A DNA stretch of 64,000 nucleotides from IMGVR_UViG_3300042545_001134:246692-310691, one strand, 5' to 3'. Counted from the stretch's first letter, positions 45,887 to 58,665 are shown. Translations and numbers: made by a program. Notes: a model not told the origin generated them from the sequence alone.

Positions 45887-46270
45887 ATGGAATTAATATT
45901 AGTAAGGGGTTTACCGGGTTCAGGTAAATCAACATTCGCAAAATCTTTGGGTTGTCCTTGTTTCGAGGCAGATATGTATTTCATCAACGAAGATGGGGTG
46001 TACAACTTTGATGCGTCAAAAATTAAAATGGCCCATCAATGGTGTAAAGACAGGTTAGTACAACTCATGGAAGTGGACATCAAAAAAATTGCGATATCGA
46101 ATACATTCACCCAAGAATGGGAAATGGATGATTACTATAAATTGGCGGAACAATACGGGTACACCGTGTTTAGTGTTATCGTTGAGAATAGACATAACGG
46201 AAAAAATGTTCACGGGGTACCTCAGGACAAATTAGAAATCATGAAAGAAAGATTTCAAGTGAAACTTTAG
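45887..46270 (+). CDS. P-loop kinase (AAA_33 / polynucleotide-kinase-like)
   Basis: LILVRGLPGSGKST, EADMYF, SNTF, HGVP. Confidence 0.85.
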   Translation: MELILVRGLPGSGKSTFAKSLGCPCFEADMYFINEDGVYNFDASKIKMAHQWCKDRLVQLMEVDIKKIAISNTFTQEWEMDDYYKLAEQYGYTVFSVIVENRHNGKNVHGVPQDKLEIMKERFQVKL

Positions 46271-46275
46271 ACATT

Positions 46276-47340
46276 ATGTTAGACATTTTAGAAAGATATC
46301 ATAAGGATGGTTTGTTACATAAACAAACCCACCCAACTCTTGATTTGACCATATGGAATTATTCGCCGAAAGTTCAATATGAAAGACTGTGGGATGAGAT
46401 AACTGTGCAATGTCGTGGTCTTGTTACTAACAGTAAAGGTGAAATTGTTGCGAAACCATTCAAAAAGTTCTTCAACTATGAAGAACATAAACCAGAAGAA
46501 ATACCAAATGAGTATTTTGAGGTTTATGAAAAAATGGATGGTTCTTTAGGTATATTATTCAACTATAATGGTGAATGGGTAATGGCAACCCGTGGTTCGT
46601 TTATTTCTGAACAATCAGTTAAAGGTCGTAAGTTACTTGAGAAATATGATTATAATCGGTTACATACCGACTACACTTATTTATTTGAAATAATCTATCC
46701 CGAAAATAGAATTGTGTGTGTTTACGATTTTGAAGATTTAGTTTTATTGGGTGTAATCCACACAGAAAGTGGTAACGAGGTTAATATTCATAACCTCAAT
46801 AATGAAGATATCCGATTAAACAACATGATTGGTAATTTAGGTTTCAGAGTCGTTACCTTATATAAAACATGGGGTGAAGGATTTGACGTACTGAAAGAAG
46901 AAATATCAAAAGATAGAGAAGGATACGTTATTCGTTTTAGAAATGGTTTTCGTATGAAAATCAAAGGGGATGAATATGTCCGTTTGCACCGAATATTAAC
47001 CAATATATCTAATAGAGACATTTGGGAGTATTTGAAAGATGGTAAACCTATGGATGAAATCTTAGATAAAGTACCCGATGAATTTTACGATTGGGTTAAG
47101 AACACCAAAAATGATTTAATTACACAATTCAATATATTAGAAAAAGAATATCAATGGATATTCAAAGTAACAAACAGGGTTCACGGTATTGAGAATCGTG
47201 CAGTCTTTGCTGAGTACGCAAAAAAATACAAACACCCCAACTTATTATTTAATATGTTGGATGGTAAAGACTATTCGCAACAAATATGGAAACTTCTGTA
47301 CCCAACATATTCAAAACCATTTAAAAAAGATGAAATATAG
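46276..47340 (+). CDS. RNA ligase 1 (T4 Rnl1/RnlA-like)
   Basis: CRGLV, KFFN, EKMDGSLG, ATRGSF, FEIIYPENRIV, EGYVI, MKIK. Confidence 0.92.
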   Translation: MLDILERYHKDGLLHKQTHPTLDLTIWNYSPKVQYERLWDEITVQCRGLVTNSKGEIVAKPFKKFFNYEEHKPEEIPNEYFEVYEKMDGSLGILFNYNGEWVMATRGSFISEQSVKGRKLLEKYDYNRLHTDYTYLFEIIYPENRIVCVYDFEDLVLLGVIHTESGNEVNIHNLNNEDIRLNNMIGNLGFRVVTLYKTWGEGFDVLKEEISKDREGYVIRFRNGFRMKIKGDEYVRLHRILTNISNRDIWEYLKDGKPMDEILDKVPDEFYDWVKNTKNDLITQFNILEKEYQWIFKVTNRVHGIENRAVFAEYAKKYKHPNLLFNMLDGKDYSQQIWKLLYPTYSKPFKKDEI

Positions 47341-47764
47341 AATTTATTTAGACGATGTTAGAACACCAATTAGTCCAAACAATGAATGGGTGGATGGTAT
47401 TGAGGAATGGACTGTTGTTAGGAATTACGTGGAATTCGTAGAGAAAATAACCGAGATTGGTTTGGAGAACATAGAATTAATTTCTTTGGACCACGATTTA
47501 GGTGATACCGCAATGGCCGAATGGCATCGTAATGTTTATCACAACTATGAGTTGGATTATGATAATATCCTTGAAAAAACCGGAATGGATTGTGTTAAAT
47601 GGTTGGTTGAAAAATGGATGGATGGTGAACCCGTGGTTACTGTTGTTGTACACTCGGCAAACGCAATCGGTAGTGGAAATATGATGGGTTATATAAACAA
47701 TTACCGACACATCAATAAATTACCACAAAATTGTATTAGAGTTCAGTGGGAACACACGGTGTAA
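47330..47764 (+). CDS. Cyclic-phosphate-processing receiver domain protein
   Basis: YLDDVR.P, ISLDHDLG, TGMDCVKWL, HSAN..G; coupled to the ligase. Confidence 0.8.
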   Translation: MKYRIYLDDVRTPISPNNEWVDGIEEWTVVRNYVEFVEKITEIGLENIELISLDHDLGDTAMAEWHRNVYHNYELDYDNILEKTGMDCVKWLVEKWMDGEPVVTVVVHSANAIGSGNMMGYINNYRHINKLPQNCIRVQWEHTV

Positions 47765-47826: not shown

Positions 47827-48156
47827 ATGGATACAAATACTAACTCAATTGCGACCAAAAAATTATTAATAAAAGGAAAGTATGAAGGTTTTAAAGACTT
47901 TTATGATGTTAACAAAATTGTTATTTACAAAAACATTTTAAAACTTTTTACCAACTTCAAAAAACAAGATAAAGACCAATTAGTTCTTATCATTTCGGCA
48001 AAGATTAGTAATTTAGATTGGGAAACCGAATTGAAATTTCAAAGAAAAGAGTCCATCGTTTTAGTTCGTGATATCATGCCGTACTTCGAGCAAATCGAAG
48101 ACTATGAAACATGTGGTCAAATCTGTGACCTATACAAAAAAATACAATCAGTTTGA
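47827..48156 (+). CDS. Hypothetical protein
   Basis: 109 aa; C-terminal EQIEDYETC is UVR-like. Confidence 0.65.
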   Translation: MDTNTNSIATKKLLIKGKYEGFKDFYDVNKIVIYKNILKLFTNFKKQDKDQLVLIISAKISNLDWETELKFQRKESIVLVRDIMPYFEQIEDYETCGQICDLYKKIQSV

Positions 48157-50439
48157 TGAGTGAGATAAGTTTGAATCACCTTTAACAATATACTTTATGT
48201 TAAGGGTGACAGAACTTGTCACAAAATTTATAGTAAAACTCGTAACGGGTGTTACTGTTTTATAATTTGATGGAGTTATCGAATTAAAATCTGACGCAGT
48301 ATACCACCACACTTTATCAAACGTAATCATACCTGTAAGATTTGCACCAAGTAAGTACGCATCAGGTATGGTAACAACACCGTCATCATTAATGTCACCA
48401 GCCCTCATTTTAGGTCCACTGTTCAAATGTATTCCTGAAAGTGTATTGTTGGGTGTATTTTCATTTTGAGACTCGTTAAACACCAAATCAAAGTCTGATG
48501 AAGTTAGTGTTGGCGTAAATGAAGGTACAACTTTGAAAGTTGCATTATGTTTTGTTGGATTCAATGTATATGTTCCGTTTGTTGCGACCGTTACGGTTTG
48601 TAATAATGTGTCCGTAGTACCCACAACCAAATATAATTTAACCTGCGGTCTTGTGGATAGTCCAGATGGAATTGTAATTGTACCACTAATTGTTTCAGTT
48701 ATAATTGAAACCGTACCATTACTACTATATGCAAATCCACAAGTACCACTTTGTAATTGTGCTCTAAATAATGTTTTGGTTGTAATGTTTGTATAACTAT
48801 TACTTGCAGTTGTGTTTGTTATGTCTGTCCAGTTGACACCGTCATTAGTAGACTTCTGCCATTTAACAATAGTTCCAGTATAACTACTTAATGTCAATGT
48901 ACCTGAGTTTGTTGTACTCGTGTGAGTTGCTGATGACACACCACCACCAACAGGGGGTGTTCCCGATGTTACGCTGATAGTTTTAGCACCTGATAATACC
49001 GCACTACCACAACTCGGTGTTTGGACTTCAACACGATAATAATATGTACCAGCGGAACTTATGGTTTCTGTTAAACTTGTTGTTGTGTTAGAGATATTAG
49101 TCCAATTCACGTTGTCCGTTGAGCGTTGCCATTTATTTACATTACCCTGTTGACCTGATAATGTTAATTCAACTTGACCACCGGCACATATAGAATTATT
49201 TGCCGCGAATACCGACCCCGATTTAGTTGGTTTTACGGTAACATAGACACTTGAGGTTGCCAATCCCGAACAACTAACAGGACTTGATGAATTCACAATT
49301 GCTCGGTAATATGTTGTCTTCGTTAAATTGGTTACCGTTATACTTGTTGATGTACTTGTGATAGTTGTTCCTGCAGTAAAAAAGTTATCGAAAGATGATT
49401 CCCATCTAACAACACTACCCGATAAATTATTTAATGTTAATGTCGTACTATTACTTCCTGAACATACGTTAACATCACCACCACTTATGTAACCACTTGA
49501 AGAGTTACTGACCTCAATATTTCTTGTTAATATAGTTGTACTCGTTGTTATATCACCCGGCATGTCACCATACTCACAAATATAACCCGGTAGAGTACTA
49601 TTTGCTAAGTCATTCCATTGACCACTATTTGATGAATAGAATTGTCCAAACGCTTCCGAGGTACCATTTGGTTCTCCACCCGCCCATTTATGATACATAC
49701 CCGATACTAAGGTTGTACTTGGGGTATTTCCATTTGAAAAGTTTTGACCTTTTTCAGGACCTGTAACCCAGTGCCACTTTCCTTCTGATGCGGATTGACT
49801 CGCATAAACAGTTGAACCCTTTGCAGTGTTGATATAGTTGTAATCATCCGATGCACCAAACCAAGCATCGTTTGCCATTAATTTCCAAATAAAGTTATTT
49901 TCCGCCTCGGATAAAACTGTTGCCAAATAACCAACCCTTCCGAAGTATGATTTATTACTTGCGTTTGTATATGAATTAGTCCAACTTGTATTACCCGACA
50001 CATATTCATAAAAGTGTTCGGTTAATGGATTATAAAAAACAGTACCTGCAACGAAAGTCACTCTTCTTTGAAGTGCGTAACATGTGGAGGTGGTTGATTT
50101 AAATTCAACACCCCTTAATACTGATTCCCAATTTGTTGCAGTTGTTGAACCACTAAAAATTAAAACACCCGTTGTGGTATTAAATGATGAAGAAACTCCC
50201 GATGGAAGTGTTGCCGTTGACCTTAATTGGTCACCACTCGTATATGTTTGAGATATTTGAACTCTAAAACCTGTAATCGTTCCATTTGCGGTTAAAGTTA
50301 GATTTGGGTCAACTTTAGTCCACGTATTATATGTCGATGAAAGAGCACTCGTACTTGATGTTCCAAGACTAACAGATGTTGCCTGTGAAAAACCTAAGAC
50401 TGGTAACAATAAAAATAATATGTATAGTAGTTTTCTCAT
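48148..50439 (-). CDS. Secreted C-type lectin, Ig-like repeats and C-terminal dockerin-like domain
   Basis: Signal peptide; GYLATV.S.AEN, WFGASD, EGKWHW, W..GEPN, WNDL, YICEY; three G..V.WQ.S repeats; AGDINDDGVVTIPDAYLL. Confidence 0.85.
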   Translation of the reverse strand: MRKLLYILFLLLPVLGFSQATSVSLGTSSTSALSSTYNTWTKVDPNLTLTANGTITGFRVQISQTYTSGDQLRSTATLPSGVSSSFNTTTGVLIFSGSTTATNWESVLRGVEFKSTTSTCYALQRRVTFVAGTVFYNPLTEHFYEYVSGNTSWTNSYTNASNKSYFGRVGYLATVLSEAENNFIWKLMANDAWFGASDDYNYINTAKGSTVYASQSASEGKWHWVTGPEKGQNFSNGNTPSTTLVSGMYHKWAGGEPNGTSEAFGQFYSSNSGQWNDLANSTLPGYICEYGDMPGDITTSTTILTRNIEVSNSSSGYISGGDVNVCSGSNSTTLTLNNLSGSVVRWESSFDNFFTAGTTITSTSTSITVTNLTKTTYYRAIVNSSSPVSCSGLATSSVYVTVKPTKSGSVFAANNSICAGGQVELTLSGQQGNVNKWQRSTDNVNWTNISNTTTSLTETISSAGTYYYRVEVQTPSCGSAVLSGAKTISVTSGTPPVGGGVSSATHTSTTNSGTLTLSSYTGTIVKWQKSTNDGVNWTDITNTTASNSYTNITTKTLFRAQLQSGTCGFAYSSNGTVSIITETISGTITIPSGLSTRPQVKLYLVVGTTDTLLQTVTVATNGTYTLNPTKHNATFKVVPSFTPTLTSSDFDLVFNESQNENTPNNTLSGIHLNSGPKMRAGDINDDGVVTIPDAYLLGANLTGMITFDKVWWYTASDFNSITPSNYKTVTPVTSFTINFVTSSVTLNIKYIVKGDSNLSHSSN

Positions 50440-52067
50440 AGATTAACCTTACTACCTATTAAGAAGAAAGATAAAATAGGAATTTCGGGGTTCGAACTTA
50501 TATTCGCCTTATAATTCATGTTTATTTTAAATCTTTTTGAGATTTGATAATCAAATCCACTACCCAAGAATCCACTAAAAAATCTATCGGTTATTGTTAC
50601 TTGTTCTTTTGTTGAGTAAACCAACGGTGTTGACATTACATATAATTCGGGTGACACCATTAATTTTTTACCGACCTTAAACGGTCTGGTGTAAAACGCA
50701 GTTACAGATGGTGAATAATAACCACTCTTATCTTCTGAAATGATTGATACCGCACCACTTACGTTAAAACCCGTAACACCCCATTTACCTGCGTTTAAAA
50801 TACCACTATATCCTAAGAAACCAAGTATATTTCCATAGGTGTATACACCAGTTAGACTAGCGTTATGTATGTACTTTATTGTGTTCTTTTTATTGTAATG
50901 TAACTTAGTATATTTTGTCGATATCGCAAATTGATTAAGATTTGCCCAAATCATAGCGGTCGCCCCGAAACTCGATAAACCTGTCATTGATGACCTGTTT
51001 GCACTCAAGTTAAGAATTGGAGTAAATGTTTTATTTAAATTTTGTGCGGTTGTTAAATCAGAAGAAACAATCAATGGATTTGAACTACCTGATTTACCAC
51101 CACCTGATTTACCACCACCTGATTTACCACCACCCGATTTACCACCACCTGAACTACCACCACCACTACCATTATCGTTGTGAGCGTCATTATTCATTGT
51201 TGTGGTTGCCCCAACCTCTTCATTACTTTGACTGTTTGAATTGTTACCCGACCCCGTTCCACCACCTGTTGTACTTCCGCCTGTGGTTCCACCCGAACTA
51301 CCCGTAGAACTACCATTACCACCGGTTCCACTTCCACCTGTTGTACTACCGCCAGTTGTTCCTGAACCACCCGTTCCACTTCCTCCTGTTGTACTACCGC
51401 CAGTTGTTCCTGAACCACCTACAGGTGGCTGAGACGAGCCACTTCCCCCTTGAGGTGGGTTACTTGAACCTGTGCTGTTTCCTCCCTGTGTTCCAGTTGA
51501 ACCTCCCTGAGAAGAATTAGTTCCTCCAGTCGACCCAGTAGTTCCTCCTGAACCTTGGGATTGACCTCCATTCTCGCCTCCCTGAGAAGACGAACCACTT
51601 CCGTTATTGTTATTACCTGACCCATTTGAATTTCCATTAGATTGTTTATTCCCATCTTTTTTATTATTCCCACCGGCATTAAGATTACCCCCACTCGATG
51701 ATGATTGAGCGGATGACATAATACTACCAACAACCGATTGTACGGTACTACTAATAATTTGGGATGTGATTTGATTTTGTGTTACTTGACCTTGTTGTTG
51801 TGAACATGGGTTTGTTTGACGATACTCGGAGTATGTTTGATTAACCCAACTTGAGAATACTCCACTGGCAACATCCGCAGCGGTAAAGTATTGACTTTTA
51901 TTTAAAAAAAATATTGTAGTACCACCTTGTAATGGTACGGTAAAAAGAGTTACTTCTTTTGTACATGGGTCGATAAATGTTTGCACCGACACCTGAGCCT
52001 TTATATTCTGACTAAACAGAACAAAAAAACTTATAAAAAATAATGTCTTTATTGTTTTCCAATACAT
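50436..52067 (-). CDS. Secreted protein with long Gly/Ser/Thr linker and C-terminal beta-barrel-like region
   Basis: Signal peptide, ~200 aa G/S/T/N low complexity including GGGKS x3-4, then alternating strands ending GSKVNL. Confidence 0.7.
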   Translation of the reverse strand: MYWKTIKTLFFISFFVLFSQNIKAQVSVQTFIDPCTKEVTLFTVPLQGGTTIFFLNKSQYFTAADVASGVFSSWVNQTYSEYRQTNPCSQQQGQVTQNQITSQIISSTVQSVVGSIMSSAQSSSSGGNLNAGGNNKKDGNKQSNGNSNGSGNNNNGSGSSSQGGENGGQSQGSGGTTGSTGGTNSSQGGSTGTQGGNSTGSSNPPQGGSGSSQPPVGGSGTTGGSTTGGSGTGGSGTTGGSTTGGSGTGGNGSSTGSSGGTTGGSTTGGGTGSGNNSNSQSNEEVGATTTMNNDAHNDNGSGGGSSGGGKSGGGKSGGGKSGGGKSGSSNPLIVSSDLTTAQNLNKTFTPILNLSANRSSMTGLSSFGATAMIWANLNQFAISTKYTKLHYNKKNTIKYIHNASLTGVYTYGNILGFLGYSGILNAGKWGVTGFNVSGAVSIISEDKSGYYSPSVTAFYTRPFKVGKKLMVSPELYVMSTPLVYSTKEQVTITDRFFSGFLGSGFDYQISKRFKINMNYKANISSNPEIPILSFFLIGSKVNL

Positions 52068-52080
52068 AATAATAAATACT

Positions 52081-52104
52081 AAAAAGGGGGTTATTAACCC
52101 CCCA
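52081..52104 (-). terminator. Putative intrinsic terminator
   Basis: GGGGGTT-AAT-AACCCCC plus U tract on the minus strand. Confidence 0.55.
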
Positions 52105-52135
52105 AATTTTTAATTATCAATAATAAAAAATAACA

Positions 52136-52903
52136 TTAATTAGGAAAAACACCCTTCTTAATCATCCTAAGTAGGATTCTACTACATGCGATGTCCAATG
52201 ATTTTTTTGTTGCGATTCCAATTGTTGATTGGTTGAATTTTACTTCACTTAGATTATCATCGTTTAATAAACTTAATTCTCTTACCGTCGTCGCCTCACC
52301 CAAACCACTAGCACCAATAATGGCACCCGTTTCTGCGTCTGTGAATCGAACTTGCATACCAATACGAGTTGTTACAGTATTTTTAACTCCATTTGCCATG
52401 TTTACTGTTTCATCTTCACTAACAGAATAATCATATAGTTCAATTGTAACAAAGTAATGTGCCAAACGTATTTTACCTCTACCGTTTAAAGTATCTTGGG
52501 AAATACCCGCTTGAGATGCTTGGAATTGTTTTACCATTCTATTCTTAATCTCTGTTTTATCCTCAGTGAAAATAAAACGATTAAGATTCTCAAGATATTC
52601 AAGTGTCATATTCGCAACACCCAAACCAACTTTCTTTTCCTTTAGTTCAGGGTATAGTTCATATACCTCATCACTAATACCGATTTTTAATATCTGTATT
52701 GGAATTTGAGGTCCCTCATAATCCATTAAAGAATCGATATTAACACTGGTTTCAAAAGATGCCTTATATTGTTCTGTTTGTGTTTTACCGATAGTTTGTG
52801 CGGTTGCCTTATTGGCAAACGCAAACATTAAAAGAAACCATAAGATAACAACCATGATTGGCATCAAATATTGTTTTACTTTATCGTTATTTAATAGTTT
52901 CAT
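52136..52903 (-). CDS. CsgG/HfaB-family-like protein
   Basis: GLGVANM..E.L...NRF...E......., A.YFV...L.DY, IGMQVRFTDAETGAII. Confidence 0.65.
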   Translation of the reverse strand: MKLLNNDKVKQYLMPIMVVILWFLLMFAFANKATAQTIGKTQTEQYKASFETSVNIDSLMDYEGPQIPIQILKIGISDEVYELYPELKEKKVGLGVANMTLEYLENLNRFIFTEDKTEIKNRMVKQFQASQAGISQDTLNGRGKIRLAHYFVTIELYDYSVSEDETVNMANGVKNTVTTRIGMQVRFTDAETGAIIGASGLGEATTVRELSLLNDDNLSEVKFNQSTIGIATKKSLDIACSRILLRMIKKGVFPN

Positions 52904-52904
52904 A

Positions 52905-53459
52905 TTATAAACTGCCTTCTTCTTTTATTTTTCCGCACTTTAAACATTCTTCTTCACCATCTCCGTCAGCATCACCCCAAACGTGTTCACACTGTCTGTG
53001 GTCAAAATACTCATCGATGATTCCGTCGTTGTCAAAGTCTAATCCGTCCATAACACCATCTCCATCTTCATCGATTTCAACACCTTTTTTGGCAACTTGG
53101 ACAGGTTGTTCAAGTTCCTCGATTATGGGTGACGATGTTGGTCCACTTGGTATATCAGACGTGTTTGATATCGAAATACCGTCCTCCTCATCCATTTTCT
53201 GAACTAACATTTTATCCTTATCGGTATCACTAAACCAATAGTCAATGATTTTCCCGTAAGAACCAATAAATGCACCTAATAAAAGGAGTAAAAGTTCTTT
53301 CCACTCTCCTTCAATTGGTGATTTGGAGAATATCGCAAAAAACATTCCGCCAACGATGAACATGAACCCACCTAATACTAAAGCGGTAATGTACCATCTT
53401 CTACGCATCATTGCATATAATAATTGCTTAAATCCGTCTGGTTGTTGTGTATTTGACAT
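52905..53459 (-). CDS. Two-TM membrane protein with Ca-binding DxDxDG loops
   Basis: Two hydrophobic helices; DEDGDG, DFDNDG, DADGDG; CEH...CLKC. Confidence 0.7.
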   Translation of the reverse strand: MSNTQQPDGFKQLLYAMMRRRWYITALVLGGFMFIVGGMFFAIFSKSPIEGEWKELLLLLLGAFIGSYGKIIDYWFSDTDKDKMLVQKMDEEDGISISNTSDIPSGPTSSPIIEELEQPVQVAKKGVEIDEDGDGVMDGLDFDNDGIIDEYFDHRQCEHVWGDADGDGEEECLKCGKIKEEGSL

Positions 53460-53483
53460 ATTTCTTTTTTTTACTTTAAATTA

Positions 53484-53804
53484 TTACCATTTTGGCTCTT
53501 CAGCCGCAAATTCGTCTTTTTTCTTTTCTTTAGGTTTTTCAGCTGGTGCTGATGCCGCTGGTTTTTCAACAACTCTTTCAATCACTTTGGTTGTACCACC
53601 TGATTGTTGTTGTTGGTTAGCGTTACTGTTAGTAATGTTAATAACGGGTGCTGCTTGTTGAACTGGTTGTGCTTCTTCAGCACCTCCACCTAACATTGTT
53701 GCGAACCATGTACCGGCGCCTAATACTGCTGTTGACAATACACCGATTATGGTTTTTTTAAGTCCTGTCCAAGTTCCTTCTTGTTCTTGTGTTTCTTCGC
53801 TCAT
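53484..53804 (-). CDS. Single-TM hypothetical protein
   Basis: 106 aa ORF in operon. Confidence 0.7.
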   Translation of the reverse strand: MSEETQEQEGTWTGLKKTIIGVLSTAVLGAGTWFATMLGGGAEEAQPVQQAAPVINITNSNANQQQQSGGTTKVIERVVEKPAASAPAEKPKEKKKDEFAAEEPKW

Positions 53805-53808
53805 AAGT

Positions 53809-55716
53809 TTAGAGTTTTATAAATTGTTTTGTTAATTGGTTATTTTGATTGTTTAATACTAAATAGTAGTGACCCGTACTTGATGATGTCATGTCAATTT
53901 GTTTGTATCCCACTGTGGAACCTTGACCTGAAATTTCACCAATGTGTTTCACCAATCTACCTTGCATATCATAAATACTACCATTTAACTTAATATTCGG
54001 GTCGGGGAAAAGAACCTCAATCTCAAACCATCCTGTTACTGGATTTGGTCTAATAAGTGCGCTAATTTCTTTAAATTCACCGGGTAAAGTGGTTGGTGAC
54101 ATTTTATAGAAAAGTGTGGTCACTTGACTTGCTAAGTTTATTTCCAAATGGTCACCGTTATTATCAGATGCATCCATTAATTTTCTCACATAAATGTTTG
54201 TACTAACATCAACATTACCAATTGGACTAAATTTTATTTTAAATGGAGTGTGTGAACCAACCAATCCGTCTTTTTGTTGGTTGTTCATACCACCGAATCT
54301 GATGGTTCCCGCGGCCTCATCATGAGTTAAGTATTGTAACCAAGGACCACCATTAAAGTTGGAAACTATTTCATCAAATTTAACCTTTGTTTTATCGTAC
54401 TTCATCTCAAACTGTAAACCGTAGTTTTGGTCACCATTTGTGTTGATGTTAAATGGAACATACATTGGTTGTCCAAGTGATGATGTATTAGGAATTTCAA
54501 CATCTAATTTACCTTTATAAACCGCCTTAGCAACTAATACACCTGAACTGTTATAAACAGGAGATGAATAAGTTCTATCAACGTCACCTAATACAAAGTA
54601 CTTAATATCGATGTTAGTTAAGTTAGTGGTACCAATACTATCCACAACATAATTGTATGCGGTTGAGTGGTTTGTCCATTCTGTCCATTGGTTAGCGCCT
54701 AACACTAATGAATCAAATACATTTCTGTGGAATGCGTGAATCATTGTGGTTGTGTCAATCTTTTTAAGACCACTTATGTTTGCGTAAATCAAATAAGGGT
54801 CACCACCATCGATTTTACCGTTTTTGTTAACATCACCAATCAAATACGCCAAACCATGTTTCAAGTAGTTTTGTGATGGTGTTTGACTAACATCGGTAAC
54901 CGAATATTCATCATATGTTTTAACCGCATCAGATATAGTAACACCATAATCTCTAATAGTAGTCATACTATCTGCTGGGAATCTTACTGTTAATTTATAT
55001 TTTGTATTTTTATCTACGTTGTTAAGAGAGTAAAGACCTGCAGTATCCACTTGTTGTGAAGATACAAATTCACCTGTGTTAAATTTAGTACAAATGATTG
55101 TAGGTCTCATTCCAACACCTACCATAGTAGGTGGTAACCATACTTTACCACTAATAACCAAGTTACCCAAAAGTTCAAGATGCATATCCTGTACGTTCAA
55201 GGTCGCAATGTTATCACCAATTGTGGTACCATCAAATTTGAACATACGAGCCCAGTTAATTTCAAGACTATCCGCGTTGAAGTTTGATGTAACATCATTT
55301 ATGATAAATTTGTTATGTATTAAGAAAGTATCCGCAGTAATCTGAGAACCACTTGATAATACTAAGTAATTTCTGGCAACAGTGTAGTTAGTATCGGTTG
55401 CATATGTGTACGAACTTGTACTTGAGTTGTAACCCGAATACTTGTAGTCATTAAAGAACTTAATAGACAACGAAGGGGTCATACTACTAACGGTAGCGTC
55501 AACAGTTGTTGATACGTGAGTAAAAAGTTGTTTTCTATATTGAAAATCAACTTGGAAGGTTCTTATGTCCACAGATGACGATGCGTCATATTTGAACACC
55601 ACATCTAATGTGTCTCCTCTTTTAATGGTTTTATAGGCAACTGGGTTACCTATACCTTGTGCAAATGCCGACGATGATGTAATTAATACAACAAGGGCTA
55701 AAATTAGTTTTTTCAT
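53809..55716 (-). CDS. T9SS-tagged scaffold protein: cohesin-like, Ig-like, dockerin-like, cohesin-like, T9SS type A CTD
   Basis: Signal peptide; GDTLDV...FQVDFQY; GDVNKNGKIDGGD; VPF.I.....YGLQFEMKYD..KVKF; IRPNP...IYDMQGRLV...GHYYLVL...TKQFIKL. Confidence 0.8.
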   Translation of the reverse strand: MKKLILALVVLITSSSAFAQGIGNPVAYKTIKRGDTLDVVFKYDASSSVDIRTFQVDFQYRKQLFTHVSTTVDATVSSMTPSLSIKFFNDYKYSGYNSSTSSYTYATDTNYTVARNYLVLSSGSQITADTFLIHNKFIINDVTSNFNADSLEINWARMFKFDGTTIGDNIATLNVQDMHLELLGNLVISGKVWLPPTMVGVGMRPTIICTKFNTGEFVSSQQVDTAGLYSLNNVDKNTKYKLTVRFPADSMTTIRDYGVTISDAVKTYDEYSVTDVSQTPSQNYLKHGLAYLIGDVNKNGKIDGGDPYLIYANISGLKKIDTTTMIHAFHRNVFDSLVLGANQWTEWTNHSTAYNYVVDSIGTTNLTNIDIKYFVLGDVDRTYSSPVYNSSGVLVAKAVYKGKLDVEIPNTSSLGQPMYVPFNINTNGDQNYGLQFEMKYDKTKVKFDEIVSNFNGGPWLQYLTHDEAAGTIRFGGMNNQQKDGLVGSHTPFKIKFSPIGNVDVSTNIYVRKLMDASDNNGDHLEINLASQVTTLFYKMSPTTLPGEFKEISALIRPNPVTGWFEIEVLFPDPNIKLNGSIYDMQGRLVKHIGEISGQGSTVGYKQIDMTSSSTGHYYLVLNNQNNQLTKQFIKL

Positions 55717-56213
55717 AGTAGTTTATCGAGTAAGTTTATTGTTGTTTTCTTTATTGCAGAACTTGCGGATTCTTGATTGAATTTACCTCCCTCATCAATA
55801 ATGATTGTTGAAGTTGATATTTCAGTCGATTTACCTTCCGCAAATTCAGTTTTAATTTTTTTATCTCCTTTATAGAGAACACCCTTCATTCTAATGACGG
55901 TGGTACTTTTATCTTGGTGAAATACAGCAATTCCTGATTTAGTATTGACGATATCAAAGAATATTAATTCAACCTGTATTGAGTATTCGGCCTTTTCTTT
56001 TACCCCAATCAAGACCAAACTATCTTGTTCATTTATTATTTCTTGAACAATGTTTTTTACTCCAAACGCCAAATTTTTGTTACCAACAAGAGTACCAACA
56101 CGGATGTTGTTAATCACGGGTTCAACAAAAATAGTCGGTCCTGTCTGAGCAGTTACGCTCAAAAAGGGACATAGGAATAGCACAGAAAAAATTATACTTT
56201 TGATAAGTCTCAT
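55713..56213 (-). CDS. Secreted protein (possible CsgG/TolB-N-like alpha-beta fold)
   Basis: Signal peptide; GVKNIVQE and FNQES.S.AIKK echo the 255-aa CsgG-like protein. Confidence 0.55.
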   Translation of the reverse strand: MRLIKSIIFSVLFLCPFLSVTAQTGPTIFVEPVINNIRVGTLVGNKNLAFGVKNIVQEIINEQDSLVLIGVKEKAEYSIQVELIFFDIVNTKSGIAVFHQDKSTTVIRMKGVLYKGDKKIKTEFAEGKSTEISTSTIIIDEGGKFNQESASSAIKKTTINLLDKLL

Positions 56214-56237
56214 GGTTAAACAGTGGAATAAATTAGA

Positions 56238-56498
56238 TTATTCAGAGATTTCGTCTTCCGATTTTTTATTCTTGTTGTTAATCCACTTATCGACAGATGC
56301 GATACCGAATGAACCTAACGTGATTACTAAAAATCCGTCAAAGATAAATTCGTTAATTAGTAATTCTTTACCCATCCAACCTGTAATAAGGTCAACGAAT
56401 AGAGAGATTACCATCATGAGAAACGCGATGAATCCCACTACTGATTTCTCGTTAATTGTGTTGTTATCGTTAAATAACTGGCTGAAAAATTTTTTCAT
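56238..56498 (-). CDS. Small two-TM membrane protein
   Basis: Two hydrophobic helices; first gene of the operon. Confidence 0.7.
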   Translation of the reverse strand: MKKFFSQLFNDNNTINEKSVVGFIAFLMMVISLFVDLITGWMGKELLINEFIFDGFLVITLGSFGIASVDKWINNKNKKSEDEISE

Positions 56499-56632
56499 AG
56501 TTGTAGTTTGTGTTTGTTTTTATGTTTGGTTATCAATAAATATCCCGGCAAAGTGTTAAGGAAAAAAAATTCGAGAAAATCAAGTCTAAAAAAATTTTAT
56601 ATCTTTTTTGATACTTTTCTTTGTTTTTTGCA

Positions 56633-56771: not shown

Positions 56772-56800
56772 GTTGTTTAGTTTTAAAACGATATTAAAGG

Positions 56801-56830
56801 AACCTCGAGAGAAATCTCGGGGTTTTTTTT
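56801..56830 (+). terminator. Intrinsic terminator/attenuator upstream of tRNA array 1
   Basis: AACCTCGAGA-GAAA-TCTCGGGGTT plus U tract, ending 6 nt before tRNA-Ala. Confidence 0.88.
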
Positions 56831-56836
56831 GTTTTA

Positions 56837-56909
56837 GGGCTGTTGGTATAGTTGGCTAACACACGACATTTGCACTGTCGAATCCCCGGTTCGAAGCCGG
56901 GACGGTCCA
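56837..56909 (+). tRNA. tRNA-Ala(TGC)
   Basis: Cloverleaf, CGACA-TT TGC AC-TGTCG, G3:U70. Confidence 0.93.
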
Positions 56910-56940
56910 CAAAGTGTTCTTTGACATATTGGTTTAATTT

Positions 56941-57013
56941 GGTACCGTAGCTCAGTTGGTAGAGCGTCGCCCTGAAGAGGCGAGCGTCACTGGTTCGAAT
57001 CCGGTCGGTACCA
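56941..57013 (+). tRNA. tRNA-Phe(GAA)
   Basis: TCGCC-CT GAA GA-GGCGA. Confidence 0.93.
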
Positions 57014-57018
57014 CATTT

Positions 57019-57092
57019 GTCTCCGTAGCTCAGTTGGTTAGAGCACCTCACTTTTAATGAGGGAGTCACGCGTTCGAGTCGCGTCGGGGACA
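57019..57092 (+). tRNA. tRNA-Lys(TTT)
   Basis: CCTCA-CT TTT AA-TGAGG. Confidence 0.93.
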
Positions 57093-57094
57093 CA

Positions 57095-57229
57095 AAGGTT
57101 GATTGGGGAATGATTATGTCGATAGTTCGAGAGTGAATACTGACTGACATAATCGGAGTTTGGAGGTGTTCACCTAAGTAATGCCAATCATAAAAGTAGA
57201 TGTCCACTGAACCATCTTCTACTTTCCTT
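57095..57229 (+). ncRNA. Unassigned structured RNA A
   Basis: Helices TGATTGG/CCAATCA, GATTATGTC/GACATAATC, AAAGTAGA/TCTACTTT. Confidence 0.6.
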
Positions 57230-57234
57230 TATTT

Positions 57235-57307
57235 AGTTCCGTAGCTCAGTTGGGAGAGCATCTGCCTTACATGCAGAGGGTCACTGGTTCGAACCCAGTC
57301 GGAACTA
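57235..57307 (+). tRNA. tRNA-Val(TAC)
   Basis: TCTGC-CT TAC AT-GCAGA. Confidence 0.93.
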
Positions 57308-57316
57308 CAAATACAC

Positions 57317-57388
57317 ATGGGTGTGGTGCAATGGTTAGCATAAGAGTCTCCAAAACTTTTGATGGGAGTTCGAGTCTCTCCACCCGTG
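57317..57388 (+). tRNA. tRNA-Trp(CCA)
   Basis: AGAGT-CT CCA AA-ACTTT. Confidence 0.9.
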
Positions 57389-57409
57389 CAAACTTTAAAA
57401 ACAAATAAC

Positions 57410-57838
57410 ATGGAAAGAGATGACAACATCGATGCCGTCAAAATGAGATTTGAGGCGGAGAAAATGAAATTAAGGGAAGAAAGGGAAAAAACAATTAAAC
57501 AGTATTGGGAAAATTTACCAAAACTTAATAATCCTGAAGATGTACCAACACTCCCAAGAGTTGATGAAAAACAATGGAGGGAGTTTTATGTCCCAAAATT
57601 AATCGAAGCGGGAGCAATCCCAAAAAATGATTTAATTCATGGTCAAATTTATATTGGTGAACATAGAAACACAACCATCGCAAGATGGAATCAAGAAACA
57701 GATAAATTTGTACACATGAGATATAAGTTTGGTTGGAGAGAAGATGAATGTAATCACTTTGAGGATGATAATGGATTTGCGTTGTTTGTACCAATTAGAT
57801 TGGGTACACAAGAAGAATGGGATGAAAGAATTAAATAA
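57410..57838 (+). CDS. Hypothetical protein within the tRNA array
   Basis: Start re-assigned to ATG 57410 because the track start lies inside tRNA-Trp. Confidence 0.75.
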   Translation: MERDDNIDAVKMRFEAEKMKLREEREKTIKQYWENLPKLNNPEDVPTLPRVDEKQWREFYVPKLIEAGAIPKNDLIHGQIYIGEHRNTTIARWNQETDKFVHMRYKFGWREDECNHFEDDNGFALFVPIRLGTQEEWDERIK

Positions 57839-57845
57839 TTAAGTT

Positions 57846-57919
57846 ACTCTCGTAGTTCAATGGATTAGAACATTTCACTACGGATGAAAGGGTTGGGAGT
57901 TCGAGTCTCTCCGAGAGTA
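57846..57919 (+). tRNA. tRNA-Arg(ACG)
   Basis: TTTCA-CT ACG GA-TGAAA. Confidence 0.92.
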
Positions 57920-57925
57920 CGATAA

Positions 57926-57995
57926 GGTCAGTTTGGTCGTGGAGGCCGGTTAGTCTGCAAAATTAACGGAGTTGGTTCGATTCCAACATTGACCT
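57926..57995 (+). tRNA. tRNA-Cys(GCA)
   Basis: TTAGT-CT GCA AA-ATTAA, U73, short D-loop. Confidence 0.85.
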
Positions 57996-58001
57996 CAATA
58001 T

Positions 58002-58079
58002 GGTGGATATAGTTCAGTTGGTTAGAACGTCTGATTGTGGTTCAGAAGGTCGCCGGTTCGAATCCGGTTATTCACCCCA
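58002..58079 (+). tRNA. tRNA-His(GTG) with G-1 and encoded CCA
   Basis: TCTGA-TT GTG GT-TCAGA; G-1:C73. Confidence 0.93.
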
Positions 58080-58082
58080 TAT

Positions 58083-58156
58083 TGGAATATAACTCAGTTG
58101 GTTAGAGTGTCATCCTGATACGGTGAAAGTCGGTGGTTCGAGTCCACCTATTCCAA
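58083..58156 (+). tRNA. tRNA-Ile(GAT)
   Basis: TCATC-CT GAT AC-GGTGA. Confidence 0.92.
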
Positions 58157-58163
58157 CAAACAT

Positions 58164-58237
58164 TGCGGGGTGGTCTGGAGAGGTTCCAGCTCGGTCTCAT
58201 AAGCCGAATCACGTGGGTTCGATTCCCACTCCCGCAA
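58164..58237 (+). tRNA. tRNA-Met(CAT)
   Basis: TCGGT-CT CAT AA-GCCGA; initiator-like acceptor TGCGGGG; atypical D arm. Confidence 0.85.
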
Positions 58238-58301
58238 CTTTTTAAAAACATTTTGAAGTGTGACTTTTATTATGTATATTTGAAATGTTCTTTGATTTAA
58301 T

Positions 58302-58378
58302 GCCTCCTTAGCTCAGTTGGCCGGAGCGCCTCACTTGTAATGAGGATGTCGGCGGTTCGAATCCGTCAGGAGGCTCCA
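58302..58378 (+). tRNA. tRNA-Thr(TGT) with encoded CCA
   Basis: CCTCA-CT TGT AA-TGAGG. Confidence 0.93.
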
Positions 58379-58380
58379 TT

Positions 58381-58453
58381 GGTCCCGTGGTTGAATGGTT
58401 ACAATTCCACCCTGTCACGGTGCGAGGTACGGGTTCGAATCCCGTCGGGACCG
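58381..58453 (+). tRNA. tRNA-Asp(GTC)
   Basis: CACC-CT GTC AC-GGTG, G73. Confidence 0.92.
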
Positions 58454-58455
58454 CG

Positions 58456-58660: not shown

Positions 58661-58665
58661 AAATT

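What the first reader, a model, noticed from the sequence alone, without database searches (positions are those of the whole stretch)
48148..56542. Phage-encoded cohesin-dockerin-lectin surface assembly using the host T9SS, with CsgG-like and beta-barrel partners
Seen: eight co-oriented genes, all with signal peptides or TM helices, behind late-type TATTTAT motifs (56536-56542, 52072-52078). They include a 635-aa protein with two cohesin-like domains, a dockerin-like Ca-loop and a T9SS type A CTD; a 763-aa C-type lectin (EPN/WND) with a C-terminal dockerin-like domain but no CTD; a CsgG-like protein; a Gly/Ser-linker beta-barrel-like protein; and a membrane protein with DxDxDG loops. Established: cohesin-dockerin pairs assemble cellulosome-like complexes, T9SS CTDs direct export in Bacteroidota, and EPN marks mannose/glucose-type C-type lectins. 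Inference: the phage builds a lectin-displaying, possibly self-polymerising scaffold on the infected cell. It could aggregate new hosts, attach the cell to particles, or shield it from grazers or competing phage.
Basis: partly seen in the sequence, partly recalled or inferred. Interest (0 to 1): 0.85.

Follow-up and report, generated by a model that had tools for sequence, protein, structure and literature searches.

The report
Phage envelope module: lectin, cohesin, CsgG-like
A large phage of Bacteroidota carries a conserved set of genes that send a sugar-binding lectin, a cohesin scaffold, two CsgG-like proteins and a probable outer-membrane barrel into the host envelope, and in related phages these genes sit among the lysis genes, so the module probably acts when the phage leaves the cell.

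Summary
The eight minus-strand genes are real, intact and under purifying selection (dN/dS 0.02-0.26). Confirmed by tools:
- Sec signal peptides obeying the Bacteroidota Q-rule, or TM anchors
- a T9SS type A CTD and one cohesin domain in the 635-aa protein
- an EPN/WND C-type lectin in the 763-aa protein
- a length-variable Gly/Ser linker in g7

Not confirmed:
- The 'dockerin-like' part is not a dockerin. It is a transthyretin-like sandwich plus an alpha/beta domain with one Ca loop, shared by the lectin and the scaffold.
- The N-terminal 'cohesin' is unassigned.
- The beta-barrel is only weakly supported.

Genes g2-g8 keep their order in 67 environmental phage loci, and at least 562 contigs carry g6. 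The module also occurs in cultured Flavobacterium phage immuto (gp013-gp019). In relatives, an endolysin and the holin-like g1 lie inside or directly beside the cassette at several different positions. The g2/g6/barrel trio also occurs in bacterial genomes.

Best reading: an envelope complex made alongside the virion genes and linked to egress. Its biological role is unproven. It is uncharacterised and testable in a culturable phage.

The parts
56536..56542 (-). TATTTAT motif 38 nt upstream of g1; candidate late-type promoter element
   Evidence: It is the most upstream-enriched A/T 7-mer in the window and is shared with the portal and terminase genes.
56238..56498 (-). g1, 86 aa: two TM helices and a charged C-terminus; holin-like
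   Evidence: g1 homologues lie 0-48 nt from an endolysin in 6 related loci, and inside the cassette in 21 of 67 loci.
55713..56213 (-). g2, 166 aa: signal peptide plus a short CsgG-superfamily paralogue of g6
   Evidence: An ORF in L028 hits both g2 and g6 by BLASTP. jackhmmer from g2 recovers all g6-like proteins. Its orthologue is immuto gp019.
53809..55716 (-). g3, 635 aa: secreted scaffold protein (whole gene)
55192..55644 (-). g3 N-terminal beta-sandwich (residues ~25-175); family unassigned
   Evidence: The AF2 model is confident here, pLDDT ~80-90. It shows no similarity to the cohesin domain by hhalign.
54562..55155 (-). g3 shared module (residues 188-385): transthyretin/CarboxypepD_reg-like sandwich plus a Ca-loop domain
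   Evidence: BLASTP against g8 residues 584-762 gives E 2e-6. Hits are reciprocal across the two families. Alignment A4. CarboxypepD_reg matches in 21 of 41 homologues.
54082..54519 (-). g3 cohesin domain (residues ~400-545)
   Evidence: Pfam Cohesin matches in 26 of 41 homologues. In P0022 it covers residues 402-499 at 26.5 bits, above the cutoff of 24.1. Foldseek hits cohesins 5lxv, 3kcp, 4fl4, 2w1n and 3l8q.
53815..54048 (-). g3 T9SS type A C-terminal sorting domain (residues 557-634)
   Evidence: Pfam PF18962 E 8e-8 and TIGR04183 E 2e-6, both above their cutoffs.
53484..53804 (-). g4, 106 aa: bitopic inner-membrane protein with a low-complexity periplasmic tail ending in a conserved Trp
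   Evidence: Its orthologue is immuto gp016.
52905..53459 (-). g5, 184 aa: membrane protein with an acidic C-terminal region carrying DxDxDG loops and a Cys cluster
   Evidence: The C-terminal region is variable or absent in distant relatives.
52136..52903 (-). g6, 255 aa: signal peptide plus CsgG-superfamily domain; the most conserved gene of the cassette
   Evidence: 217 representative relatives. 20 of 33 distant relatives hit Pfam CsgG, best E 1.9e-25. The family profile hits E. coli CsgG in the PDB at E 0.004. Identity to relatives is 83-98% in the loci, with dN/dS 0.02-0.08.
52085..52103 (-). G+C-rich hairpin followed by a T run, between g6 and g7; terminator-like
   Evidence: The layout hairpin, then GTATTTAT, then ATG is the same as upstream of the terminase gene.
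52072..52078 (-). TATTTAT motif directly upstream of g7
51738..51992 (-). g7 N-terminal domain (residues 26-110) with a conserved Cys pair
   Evidence: It is conserved in L023, L025, L035 and immuto gp018.
51096..51737 (-). g7 Gly/Ser/Thr/Asn low-complexity linker (residues 111-324), encoded partly by tandem repeats
   Evidence: Whole-protein length among homologues ranges from 423 to 604 aa.
50439..51095 (-). g7 C-terminal domain (residues 325-543): putative outer-membrane beta-barrel
   Evidence: It occupies the position that bacterial loci fill with an OMP placed after the CsgG-like lipoprotein. hhalign against those OMPs gives probability 48%, E 2e-4. There is no Pfam or PDB sequence hit.
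49567..50031 (-). g8 C-type lectin domain (residues 137-291) with EPN and WND
   Evidence: Pfam Lectin_C gives 19.5 bits, below the cutoff of 22.6. The PDB hit CEL-I has E 5e-4. The motif is kept in 111 of 120 homologues. Immuto gp013 passes Pfam at 57 bits.
48700..49542 (-). g8 repeated Ig-like domains with Cys pairs (residues ~300-580)
   Evidence: The repeats are visible in the sequence. Ig_7 is annotated on the L004 orthologue.
48151..48690 (-). g8 C-terminal shared module (residues 584-763): transthyretin-like sandwich plus a Ca-loop alpha/beta domain; no CTD
   Evidence: The AF2 model has pLDDT 75 and pTM 0.72. Foldseek finds only transthyretin/CnaB-type hits and no dockerin.

Best explanation
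The cassette is a conserved phage module that builds a multi-protein complex in the envelope of a Bacteroidota host, transcribed from the same motif as the virion genes, and it is functionally tied to egress.

Shown:
- All eight products are targeted to the envelope by Q-rule Sec signals or TM anchors.
- g3 carries a cohesin domain and a T9SS type A sorting domain.
- g8 is an EPN-type C-type lectin.
- g3 and g8 share one homologous module, a transthyretin-like sandwich plus a Ca-loop alpha/beta domain.
- g2 and g6 are CsgG-superfamily paralogues.
- The trio of g2-like, g6-like and an outer-membrane protein also occurs together in bacterial genomes.
- Gene order is conserved in many phages.
- In relatives, a holin-like gene and an endolysin are interleaved with the cassette.

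Inferred:
- g6, g2 and the g7 barrel form an outer-membrane platform. The long flexible g7 tether and the bitopic proteins g4 and g5 connect it to the inner membrane.
- g3 is exported by the host T9SS and anchored on the surface. In lineages without the CTD it may be held by a co-encoded lipoprotein.
- The lectin, which has no export signal of its own, is recruited through the shared module, possibly to the cohesin.
- The complex acts around lysis. Most likely it binds or masks host surface glycans so that progeny are not lost on debris or on already infected cells. It may also help to weaken the outer membrane.
For: - Phage context.
- Synteny and purifying selection.
- Abundance: at least 562 IMG/VR contigs carry g6, and the order g2-g3-g4-g5-g6-g7-g8 holds in 67 unique loci.
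- Cultured relative: immuto gp013-gp019 carries the same parts as separate proteins, namely lectin+module, sandwich+module and cohesin+CTD.
- Domain evidence.
- Shared module.
- Q-rule signal peptides: with PMC5837995; precedent in P. gingivalis phages in PMC10367356.
- Bacterial counterparts have a CsgG-like lipoprotein, a second paralogue and an OMP. In Cloacimonadota a T9SS-CTD protein lies just upstream.
- Co-regulation with virion genes.
- Link to lysis genes: an endolysin lies within the locus in 23 of 67 loci, within 70 nt of a cassette gene in 14 of them, at five or more different positions. The holin-like g1 lies inside the cassette in 21 loci and directly beside the endolysin in 6.
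Against: - No protein-protein contact was tested.
- The shared module is not a dockerin, and nothing shows that it binds the cohesin.
- The CTD was detected in only 21 of about 60 g3 variants, so surface display through the T9SS cannot be the universal route.
- The g7 barrel is unproven.
- The phage CsgG-like proteins lack the lipid anchor of their bacterial relatives, and channel formation was not tested.
- No endolysin lies in this 64-kb window.
- In immuto the module lies next to nucleotide-metabolism genes.
- Late timing is inferred only from a shared upstream motif.
Confidence: 0.42

Rival explanations
1. Outer-membrane disruption machine, a functional replacement for spanins. g4 and g5 in the inner membrane, and g2, g6 and g7 at the outer membrane, form a periplasm-spanning complex through the long g7 tether. 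Once the endolysin removes the peptidoglycan, this complex breaks or fuses the membranes. The acidic Ca-binding parts might also strip divalent cations from the outer membrane.
For: A holin-like gene and an endolysin are repeatedly inserted inside or directly beside the cassette, at different positions. g4 has i-spanin-like topology, with an N-terminal TM and a periplasmic tail. g7 has a length-variable flexible linker between a small domain and a putative barrel. The core genes are extremely conserved. No PHROG-annotated spanin was found in the cassette.
Against: It does not explain a 635-aa T9SS cargo or a conserved EPN lectin. Homologous trios of CsgG-like, CsgG-like and OMP exist in ordinary bacterial loci, where lysis is not their function. 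g4 has a low-complexity periplasmic part, not a coiled coil, and the window's cassette has no lipobox lipoprotein. No endolysin is present in this window.
Confidence: 0.25
2. A true cohesin-dockerin, cellulosome-like, self-polymerising lectin scaffold is displayed through the T9SS, and its purpose is adhesion: aggregating new hosts, attaching the cell to particles, or shielding it.
For: A cohesin domain, a CTD and a lectin are present. The lectin and the scaffold share a C-terminal module, as cellulosomal components share dockerins. Immuto has a minimal set of anchor, adaptor and cargo proteins.
Against: The module fails every dockerin test made here. The second cohesin is not shown. The CTD is missing in many lineages. 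The genes share their upstream motif with virion genes of a T4-like phage for which no lysogeny genes were seen, and they are linked to lysis genes. That would leave little time before lysis for adhesion or grazer protection to pay off.
Confidence: 0.15
3. A cluster of independent secreted or membrane accessory proteins (morons) that sit together only because envelope-directed genes cluster. They form no complex.
For: Most proteins have no direct family hit. No interaction was tested.
Against: Gene order is fixed over deep divergence: g3 falls to 23-28% identity while the order is kept. g3 and g8 share a module. The same trio co-occurs in bacteria. g3 is a fusion of two neighbouring genes of immuto, and such fusions are typical of interacting partners.
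Confidence: 0.1
4. Virion components, such as fibres or decoration proteins, wrongly taken for secreted proteins.
For: In L004 the cassette lies between LamG-type fibre-like genes and the neck protein gp13. The cassette shares an upstream motif with the structural genes. BFVD fold hits include Ig-rich virion proteins.
Against: Five products have cleavable Q-rule signal peptides, conserved across nearly all orthologues checked. One has a T9SS sorting domain, others are TM proteins or CsgG-like. Tailed-phage virions assemble in the cytoplasm.
Confidence: 0.04

Closest known systems
Flavobacterium phage vB_FspM_immuto gp013-gp019 (NC_055915, host Flavobacterium sp. LMO8)
   Same: It has the same module. 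gp013 is a C-type lectin plus the shared module. gp014 is a beta-sandwich plus the shared module. gp015 is a cohesin plus a T9SS CTD. gp016 corresponds to g4, gp017 to g6 (52% identity) and gp019 to g2. gp018 corresponds to g7 by position and by the N-terminal Cys motif, although BLASTP found no hit. A tRNA cluster lies nearby.
   Different: g3 of the window is a fusion of gp014 and gp015. Immuto lacks g1 and g5, and its lectin is much shorter. The genome is 160 kb against about 310 kb. The GenBank record carries only domain names, and no functional study was found.
Cellulosome-type cohesin-dockerin assemblies
   Same: There is a cohesin domain on a surface-anchored protein. A common C-terminal module with an EF-hand-like DxNxxGxxDxxD loop sits on otherwise different secreted proteins of one operon.
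   Different: The module is not a dockerin. It has one loop instead of two tandem F-hand repeats, an alpha/beta fold, no Pfam Dockerin_1 match and no Foldseek match. The anchor is a T9SS CTD rather than SLH or sortase. The cargo is a lectin, not an enzyme. The module is encoded by a phage.
Curli secretion channel CsgG and the wider CsgG/LpoB/TolB-N superfamily
   Same: g6 and g2 belong to this superfamily. The bacterial relatives are outer-membrane lipoproteins.
   Different: The phage copies have no lipobox. No CsgA, B, E or F partners are present. Instead they are paired with an OMP. Channel formation is untested, and identity to E. coli CsgG is very low (profile E 0.004).
Holin-endolysin-spanin lysis cassettes of phages of Gram-negative bacteria
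   Same: g1 is small, has two TM helices and a charged tail, and lies next to the endolysin in relatives. Inner- and outer-membrane proteins are encoded together with the lysis genes.
   Different: There is no recognisable i-spanin coiled coil and no o-spanin lipoprotein. The cassette has large extra components (lectin and cohesin scaffold). No endolysin lies in this window.
Phage-encoded envelope proteins that mask receptors or exclude superinfection (T5 Llp, T4 Imm/Sp, Cor); comparison from general knowledge
   Same: They are phage-made proteins placed in the host envelope that could protect progeny from debris or block later infection.
   Different: Those are single small proteins. Here there are seven or eight proteins, including a lectin, and no homology to any of them.
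T9SS type A cargo proteins of Bacteroidota
   Same: A Sec signal with the Q-rule plus a C-terminal Por_Secre_tail domain above the curated cutoffs.
   Different: The cargo is encoded by a phage with lytic-type gene content. The CTD is dispensable across the family.

Membership tests
Cohesin (Pfam PF00963) | Profile match above the curated cutoff | tested here: met
   The window's own protein gave no cohesin match at E <= 1. 26 of 41 full-length homologues (55-93% identical) match. P0022 residues 402-499 score 26.5 bits, above the cutoff of 24.1.
Cohesin (Pfam PF00963) | Beta-sandwich jelly-roll fold like solved cohesins | tested here: met
   The AF2 model hits cohesins 2w1n, 3kcp, 4fl4, 5lxv (TM 0.57) and 3l8q at probability 1.0. 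Generic Ig-like multidomain proteins score similarly.
   hhalign of the N-terminal domain against the cohesin domain gives probability 0.1%. No Pfam match covers residues 25-175.
Cohesin (Pfam PF00963) | Binds a partner module | not testable with these tools
   No multimer prediction or binding assay is available.
Dockerin (Pfam PF00404) | Profile match | tested here: not met
   No Dockerin_1 or EF-hand match at E <= 1 in any of 41 g3 homologues, nor at E <= 0.1 in g8.
Dockerin (Pfam PF00404) | Two tandem ~22-residue F-hand repeats | tested here: not met
   There is one canonical DxNxxGxxDxxD loop followed by a helix. Only a short conserved GDxD...SS motif follows, about 70 residues later.
Dockerin (Pfam PF00404) | Small all-helical Ca-binding fold | tested here: not met
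   The AF2 model of the module (pLDDT 75, pTM 0.72) is a mixed alpha/beta domain behind a transthyretin-like sandwich. Foldseek against the PDB returns only transthyretin/CnaB-type hits. In the g3 model this region had pLDDT 30-38.
T9SS type A cargo | C-terminal Por_Secre_tail domain above the curated cutoffs | tested here: met
   PF18962 scores 32.9 against 27, and TIGR04183 scores 27.7 against 23, over residues 557-634.
T9SS type A cargo | N-terminal Sec signal peptide | tested here: met
   A hydrophobic N-terminus with an A/Q cleavage motif, conserved in all orthologues.
T9SS type A cargo | Actual export by a host T9SS | not testable with these tools
   The host is inferred to be a Bacteroidota from the immuto host Flavobacterium and from MAG bin labels. 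32 g3 variants have the cohesin but no detectable CTD.
C-type lectin domain (Pfam PF00059) | Profile match above the cutoff | tested here: inconclusive
   The window protein scores 19.5 bits, below the cutoff of 22.6. Its orthologue immuto gp013 scores 57.3 bits and aligns to g8 at E 4e-10. The PDB hit CEL-I has E 5e-4.
C-type lectin domain (Pfam PF00059) | EPN and WND Ca/sugar-site motifs | tested here: met
   Both are present in g8. They are kept in 111 of 120 homologues and in 39 of 40 g8-like ORFs of related loci.
C-type lectin domain (Pfam PF00059) | Ca-dependent sugar binding | not testable with these tools
   This needs a glycan array or a binding assay.
CsgG (curli channel, Pfam PF03783) | Profile match | tested here: inconclusive
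   g6 itself has no match. 20 of 33 distant full-length relatives match, best E 1.9e-25, and 8 match LpoB. The family profile hits E. coli CsgG at E 0.004. g6 is therefore a superfamily member, not a shown orthologue.
CsgG (curli channel, Pfam PF03783) | Lipoprotein signal (lipobox Cys) | tested here: not met
   Bacterial relatives have a GC lipobox. Phage g6 and g2 have signal peptidase I sites followed by Gln.
CsgG (curli channel, Pfam PF03783) | Partners CsgE/CsgF and amyloid subunits CsgA/CsgB | tested here: not met
   No such family was found among the cassette proteins.
CsgG (curli channel, Pfam PF03783) | Oligomeric transmembrane channel | not tested
Outer-membrane beta-barrel protein | Recognisable barrel domain in g7 residues 325-543 | tested here: inconclusive
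   There is no Pfam or PDB sequence hit. hhalign against the OMPs that follow g6-like genes in bacteria gives probability 48%, E 2e-4. One of those OMPs matches OMP_b-brl at E 6e-4.
Phage lysis cassette (holin, endolysin, spanin) | Small holin-like membrane protein next to an endolysin | tested here: inconclusive
   g1 has the holin-like features. This window contains no endolysin. In relatives, g1 homologues lie 0-48 nt from a GH19 endolysin in 6 loci.
Phage lysis cassette (holin, endolysin, spanin) | i-spanin and o-spanin pair | tested here: not met
   There is no lipobox lipoprotein in the window's cassette. g4 has the right topology but a low-complexity tail. No PHROG spanin hit was found.

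The most novel reading that the evidence does not exclude
Bacteroidota phages, for which I know of no recognised spanins (from memory; one paper read here mentions spanins in P. gingivalis phages, PMC10367356), may use this module as a new kind of trans-envelope egress machine. In this reading, CsgG-like rings and a tethered outer-membrane barrel are coupled to inner-membrane proteins. A cohesin scaffold and lectin, exported by the T9SS or anchored by a lipoprotein, grip the host surface glycan layer. Together they open the outer membrane and clear the surface for release of progeny.
Probability: 0.2. Interest if true: 0.9.

Novelty: new variant of a known kind. Interest (0 to 1): 0.72.

Why it matters
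- Phage proteins placed in the host envelope are known, but as single small proteins. This is a seven- to eight-protein module that is strongly conserved and very abundant, with at least 562 IMG/VR contigs and more than a thousand protein variants.
- It combines host T9SS export, a eukaryote-like Ca-dependent lectin, a cohesin and two CsgG-like proteins, and it is physically mixed with the lysis genes.
- How phages of Bacteroidota breach or leave the outer membrane and surface layer does not appear to be established, as far as I know. This module is a concrete candidate.
- It also gives a handle on an uncharacterised bacterial trio: two CsgG-like lipoproteins plus an outer-membrane protein.
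- Because a cultured phage-host pair carries it (immuto on Flavobacterium sp. LMO8), the question can be tested directly.

Tried and rejected
- Direct Pfam, PHROG, NCBIfam and PADLOC scans of the eight proteins gave only the CTD and a sub-threshold lectin hit.
- PDB sequence searches gave nothing useful for g3 (single sequence or profile) or for the g7 C-terminal profile.
- All three large homology searches were saturated by close relatives (55-100% identity), so they added abundance but no distant annotation.
- The genome scan with the broad g6 alignment failed because no stretch was conserved enough. It was repeated with a narrower alignment.
- megablast of the region against GenBank phages found no match.
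- 'Decaying host-derived island' is rejected: the ORFs are intact in all relatives and dN/dS is low.
- 'TATTTAT is just AT-rich noise' is rejected on position, although the total count is at chance.
- 'The lectin head is lineage-specific' was considered after BLAST aligned only the C-terminus of the 584-aa forms. It was rejected when EPN/WND was found in them too.
- A type B CTD or PorP/SprF reading of the g8 tail and g7 found no NCBIfam or Pfam support.
- Nine literature searches found no description of the module.

Full report
**Context**

The window is part of a large T4-like myophage. It holds a major head protein (29809-31539), a portal (35004-36815), a large terminase (36873-38642) and a T4-type RNA ligase. 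It is identical over the fetched loci to IMG/VR contigs of up to 310,691 bp. GC is about 0.32-0.39 throughout, and the cassette is not compositionally foreign.

**The observation**

I call them g1 to g8 in order of transcription. Five of them (g2, g3, g6, g7, g8) start with a hydrophobic signal sequence. g1 has two TM helices, and g4 and g5 have one clear anchor each.

Every signal peptide, here and in the orthologues I looked at, is followed by Gln; the only exceptions were two distant g2 orthologues (L023, L024). This is the Bacteroidota Q-rule for signal peptidase I substrates (PMC5837995). It has been noted before for a few proteins of P. gingivalis phages (PMC10367356).

The TATTTAT motif occurs at both stated sites. 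Its total number in the window is exactly what chance gives. However, 17 of 35 copies sit within 60 nt upstream of a same-strand start codon, against 8.3% for A/T-only 7-mers. It ranks first among all such 7-mers and precedes the portal, the terminase and other virion-region genes.

A G+C-rich hairpin with a T run at 52085-52103 separates g6 from g7. The layout is hairpin, GTATTTAT, a few bases, then ATG, and it is the same as in front of the terminase gene. The cassette is therefore probably two transcription units that share the regulatory element of the structural genes. Late timing is an inference.

**g3 (635 aa)**

- The C-terminal sorting domain passes the curated cutoffs of both Pfam and NCBIfam.
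- The protein has hundreds of full-length relatives. 26 of the 41 I aligned match Pfam Cohesin. One was examined in detail: it matches at residues 402-499 with 26.5 bits, above the cutoff of 24.1.
- 21 of 41 match CarboxypepD_reg in the middle of the protein.
- The AlphaFold model (mean pLDDT 69) is confident for an N-terminal sandwich, the middle sandwich and the CTD, and moderate for the cohesin domain. It is poor (pLDDT 30-38) for residues 255-320, where the Ca loop lies.
- Foldseek against the PDB returns several cohesins with probability 1.0, alongside generic Ig-like proteins.
- The N-terminal sandwich shows no profile similarity to the cohesin domain, so only one cohesin is shown.

**g8 (763 aa)**

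- The C-type lectin call holds. Pfam gives a sub-threshold hit. PDB hits go to CEL-I, collectins and other C-type lectins, across the EPN...WND stretch.
- The motif is kept in 111 of 120 homologues, in the shorter 584-aa forms, in immuto gp013 (which passes Pfam at 57 bits), and in 39 of 40 g8-like ORFs from related loci.
- There is no CTD.

**The 'dockerin-like' part**

g3 residues 188-385 and g8 residues 584-762 are homologous. BLASTP gives E 2e-6, the hits are reciprocal between many members of the two families, and the alignment shows 19 invariant columns.

The module has two parts. The first is a transthyretin/CarboxypepD_reg-like sandwich. The second is a domain with one EF-hand-type loop (D-x-N-x-x-G-x-x-D-x-x-D) followed by a helix, which ends in a conserved I-K-Y-x-x-x-G-D-x-x-x-S-x-S-S.

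It is not a dockerin:
- No Pfam Dockerin_1 or EF-hand match appears in any homologue.
- It has one loop rather than two tandem repeats.
- An AlphaFold model built on the joint alignment (pLDDT 75, pTM 0.72) is a mixed alpha/beta domain.
- Its Foldseek hits in the PDB are only to the transthyretin-like half.

The Ca-loop domain thus has no solved relative that I could find. Its distribution still looks like that of a docking or sorting module, because it sits on two otherwise different secreted proteins of one operon.

**The cultured relative**

Flavobacterium phage vB_FspM_immuto (160 kb, host Flavobacterium sp. LMO8) carries the module as gp013-gp019:

| Immuto gene | Content | Window counterpart |
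|---|---|---|
| gp013 | signal peptide, C-type lectin, shared module | g8 |
| gp014 | signal peptide, g3-like N-terminal sandwich, shared module | first half of g3 |
| gp015 | signal peptide, cohesin, T9SS CTD | second half of g3 |
| gp016 | | g4 |
| gp017 | 52% identical | g6 |
| gp018 | by position and N-terminal Cys motif; no BLASTP hit | g7 |
| gp019 | | g2 |

So g3 of the window is a fusion of two neighbouring immuto genes. The unfused arrangement is a surface-anchored cohesin plus two proteins that end in the same module. This is the best comparative argument for an assembly. The GenBank record names the lectin and cohesin domains only, and papers that cite the phage deal with other topics.

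**g6 and g2**

- g6 is the most conserved gene, at 83-98% identity where g3 is 65-89% in the loci, with dN/dS 0.02-0.08.
- An exhaustive search found 217 representative relatives. The distant full-length ones are bacterial lipoproteins with a GC lipobox. 20 of 33 match Pfam CsgG (best E 1.9e-25) and 8 match LpoB.
- The family profile finds E. coli CsgG in the PDB at E 0.004.
- The phage protein has a signal peptidase I site and no lipid anchor. Whether it forms a channel was not tested.
- g2 is a short paralogue. A bacterial ORF next to a g6-like gene hits both g2 and g6, and an iterated search from g2 collects all g6-like proteins.

**g7, g4, g5, g1**

- g7 has a small N-terminal domain with a conserved Cys pair. 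It then has a Gly/Ser/Thr/Asn linker of about 215 residues, encoded partly by tandem repeats and very variable in length among homologues (423-604 aa in total). It ends in a conserved domain of about 220 residues.
- That C-terminal domain has no Pfam or PDB sequence match. A barrel is suggested only indirectly. In bacterial loci the g6-like lipoprotein is followed by a protein that ends in Phe, and one such protein matches OMP_b-brl at E 6e-4. hhalign between these proteins and the g7 domain gives 48% probability. In a gammaproteobacterial MAG contig the neighbour also has the g7 N-domain.
- g4 is a bitopic protein with a low-complexity periplasmic tail and a conserved C-terminal Trp.
- g5 has an acidic tail with DxDxDG loops that is variable between lineages.
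- g1 is small, has two TM helices and a charged C-terminus.

**Distribution and bacterial counterparts**

- In the 80 best loci (67 unique), the order g2-g3-g4-g5-g6-g7-g8 is kept.
- More distant versions, binned into Sediminibacterium, Flavobacterium and 'Bacteroidetes' MAGs, keep the order with g3 only 23-28% identical.
- Real bacterial loci in KSB1, Ignavibacteriales, Rhodothermales, Bacteroidota, Chitinivibrionales, Cloacimonadota and Nitrospinota hold a g6-like lipoprotein. Several also have a second CsgG-like paralogue and/or an adjacent putative outer-membrane protein. In Cloacimonadota a T9SS-CTD protein lies directly upstream.
- The phage module therefore looks derived from an uncharacterised cellular outer-membrane system.
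- By a family-specific HMM, only 21 of about 60 unique g3 variants have the CTD, while 32 have the cohesin without it.
- In two CTD-less lineages a small lipoprotein gene follows g3, with acidic residues just after the lipobox Cys. This may be an alternative anchor, which is an inference.

**The link to lysis**

A PG_binding_1 + GH19 endolysin lies between g5 and g6 in L004 and L019, between g1 and g2 in L023, after g6 in L024, and just upstream of g3 in L025.

In the 67 unique loci:
- An endolysin is within the locus in 23. In 14 of these it lies within 70 nt of a cassette gene, and at five or more different positions overall.
- g1 homologues are present in 32. In 21 they lie inside the cassette between g4/g5 and g6.
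- g1 homologues are directly next to the endolysin (0-48 nt) in 6.

In genomes of 150-300 kb this repeated interleaving is unlikely to be accidental. It makes g1 a good holin candidate and ties the module to the time of lysis. In this window no endolysin was found, and in immuto it lies about 6 kb away.

**Interpretation**

What is shown is a conserved set of proteins, directed to the envelope and adapted to the host, with defined domains. It has a shared module, a bacterial ancestry for three parts, co-regulation signals with the virion genes, and physical linkage to lysis genes.

What I infer is an envelope complex:
- g2, g6 and g7 sit at the outer membrane.
- The g7 linker, g4 and g5 tether the complex towards the inner membrane.
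- g3 is exported by the T9SS, or held by a lipoprotein.
- The lectin is recruited through the shared module.

For the biological role I favour action at egress: binding or masking host surface glycans so that progeny are not wasted on debris or on infected cells, possibly together with weakening the outer membrane (confidence 0.42).

The main rival is a spanin-replacing machine that disrupts the outer membrane (0.25). Independent morons (0.10) and virion components (0.04) are unlikely.

**Novelty**

All the domains are known, and phage-encoded envelope proteins are a known kind. The module as a system is not described in the literature I could search, and no PHROG family matches any of its proteins. 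I rate it a new variant of a known kind. There is a one-in-five chance that it is a new type of egress machinery.

Noticed in passing
window 56837-63941 (+): An array of 21 tRNA genes starts 339 nt upstream of g1, on the opposite strand. Several ORFs listed there (for example 56794-57207 and 57359-57838) overlap tRNAs and are probably spurious. Phage immuto also has tRNA genes a few kb from its copy of the module.
   Followed up: partly
window-wide, e.g. 36820-36847, 38647-38653, 52072-78: TATTTAT(A) is the most start-proximal A/T 7-mer in the window. It often lies 11-30 nt before the ATG and sometimes directly after a terminator-like hairpin, as at the terminase gene and g7. It is a candidate late promoter of this phage group, comparable to T4 TATAAATA.
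   Followed up: partly
window 43384-47764 (+): A ClpB-like double AAA+ ATPase (688 aa; its best PHROG match is annotated 'ATP-dependent protease') is followed by an AAA_33 kinase-like gene (by synteny with relatives), a T4-type RNA ligase 1 and a cREC_REC cyclic-phosphate-processing receiver domain protein. This looks like an RNA or tRNA repair set next to the tRNA array.
   Followed up: no
window 62009-62713 (+): An SGNH/GDSL-type hydrolase (Pfam E 1.4e-6, below the cutoff) with a weak PHROG tail-fibre match. A similar gene lies upstream of the cassette in L001.
   Followed up: no
L033 5573-7261 and L034 5440-7128 (Nitrospinota MAGs): A caspase-like Peptidase_C14 protein with an N-terminal CsgG/DUF3280-like domain and an EF-hand lies directly upstream of the two CsgG-like lipoproteins and the OMP.
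   Followed up: no
L023 6343-6699; L024 6213-6584: In lineages whose g3 lacks the T9SS CTD, a 118-123-aa lipoprotein gene sits between g3 and g4. It has acidic residues just after the lipobox Cys, like a Bacteroidota surface-export signal. It may be an alternative anchor.
   Followed up: partly
L036 3936-4514 (immuto gp012): A NUC1/endonuclease G-type nuclease with a Q-rule-type signal peptide (Gln follows the hydrophobic core) lies immediately upstream of the immuto module. It may be a secreted or periplasmic phage nuclease.
   Followed up: no
window 51087-51164 and 51297-51419: Tandem DNA repeats (15 nt x 5 and 48 nt x 2) encode the GGGKS and Gly/Ser/Thr repeats of the g7 linker. This fits the large length variation of the protein among relatives.
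   Followed up: yes
L035 (gammaproteobacterial MAG contig NZZP01000013): It carries g6-like, g7-like (N-domain plus barrel, no long linker) and g2-like genes in a row, followed by many small genes. It may itself be a phage fragment outside Bacteroidota.
   Followed up: no
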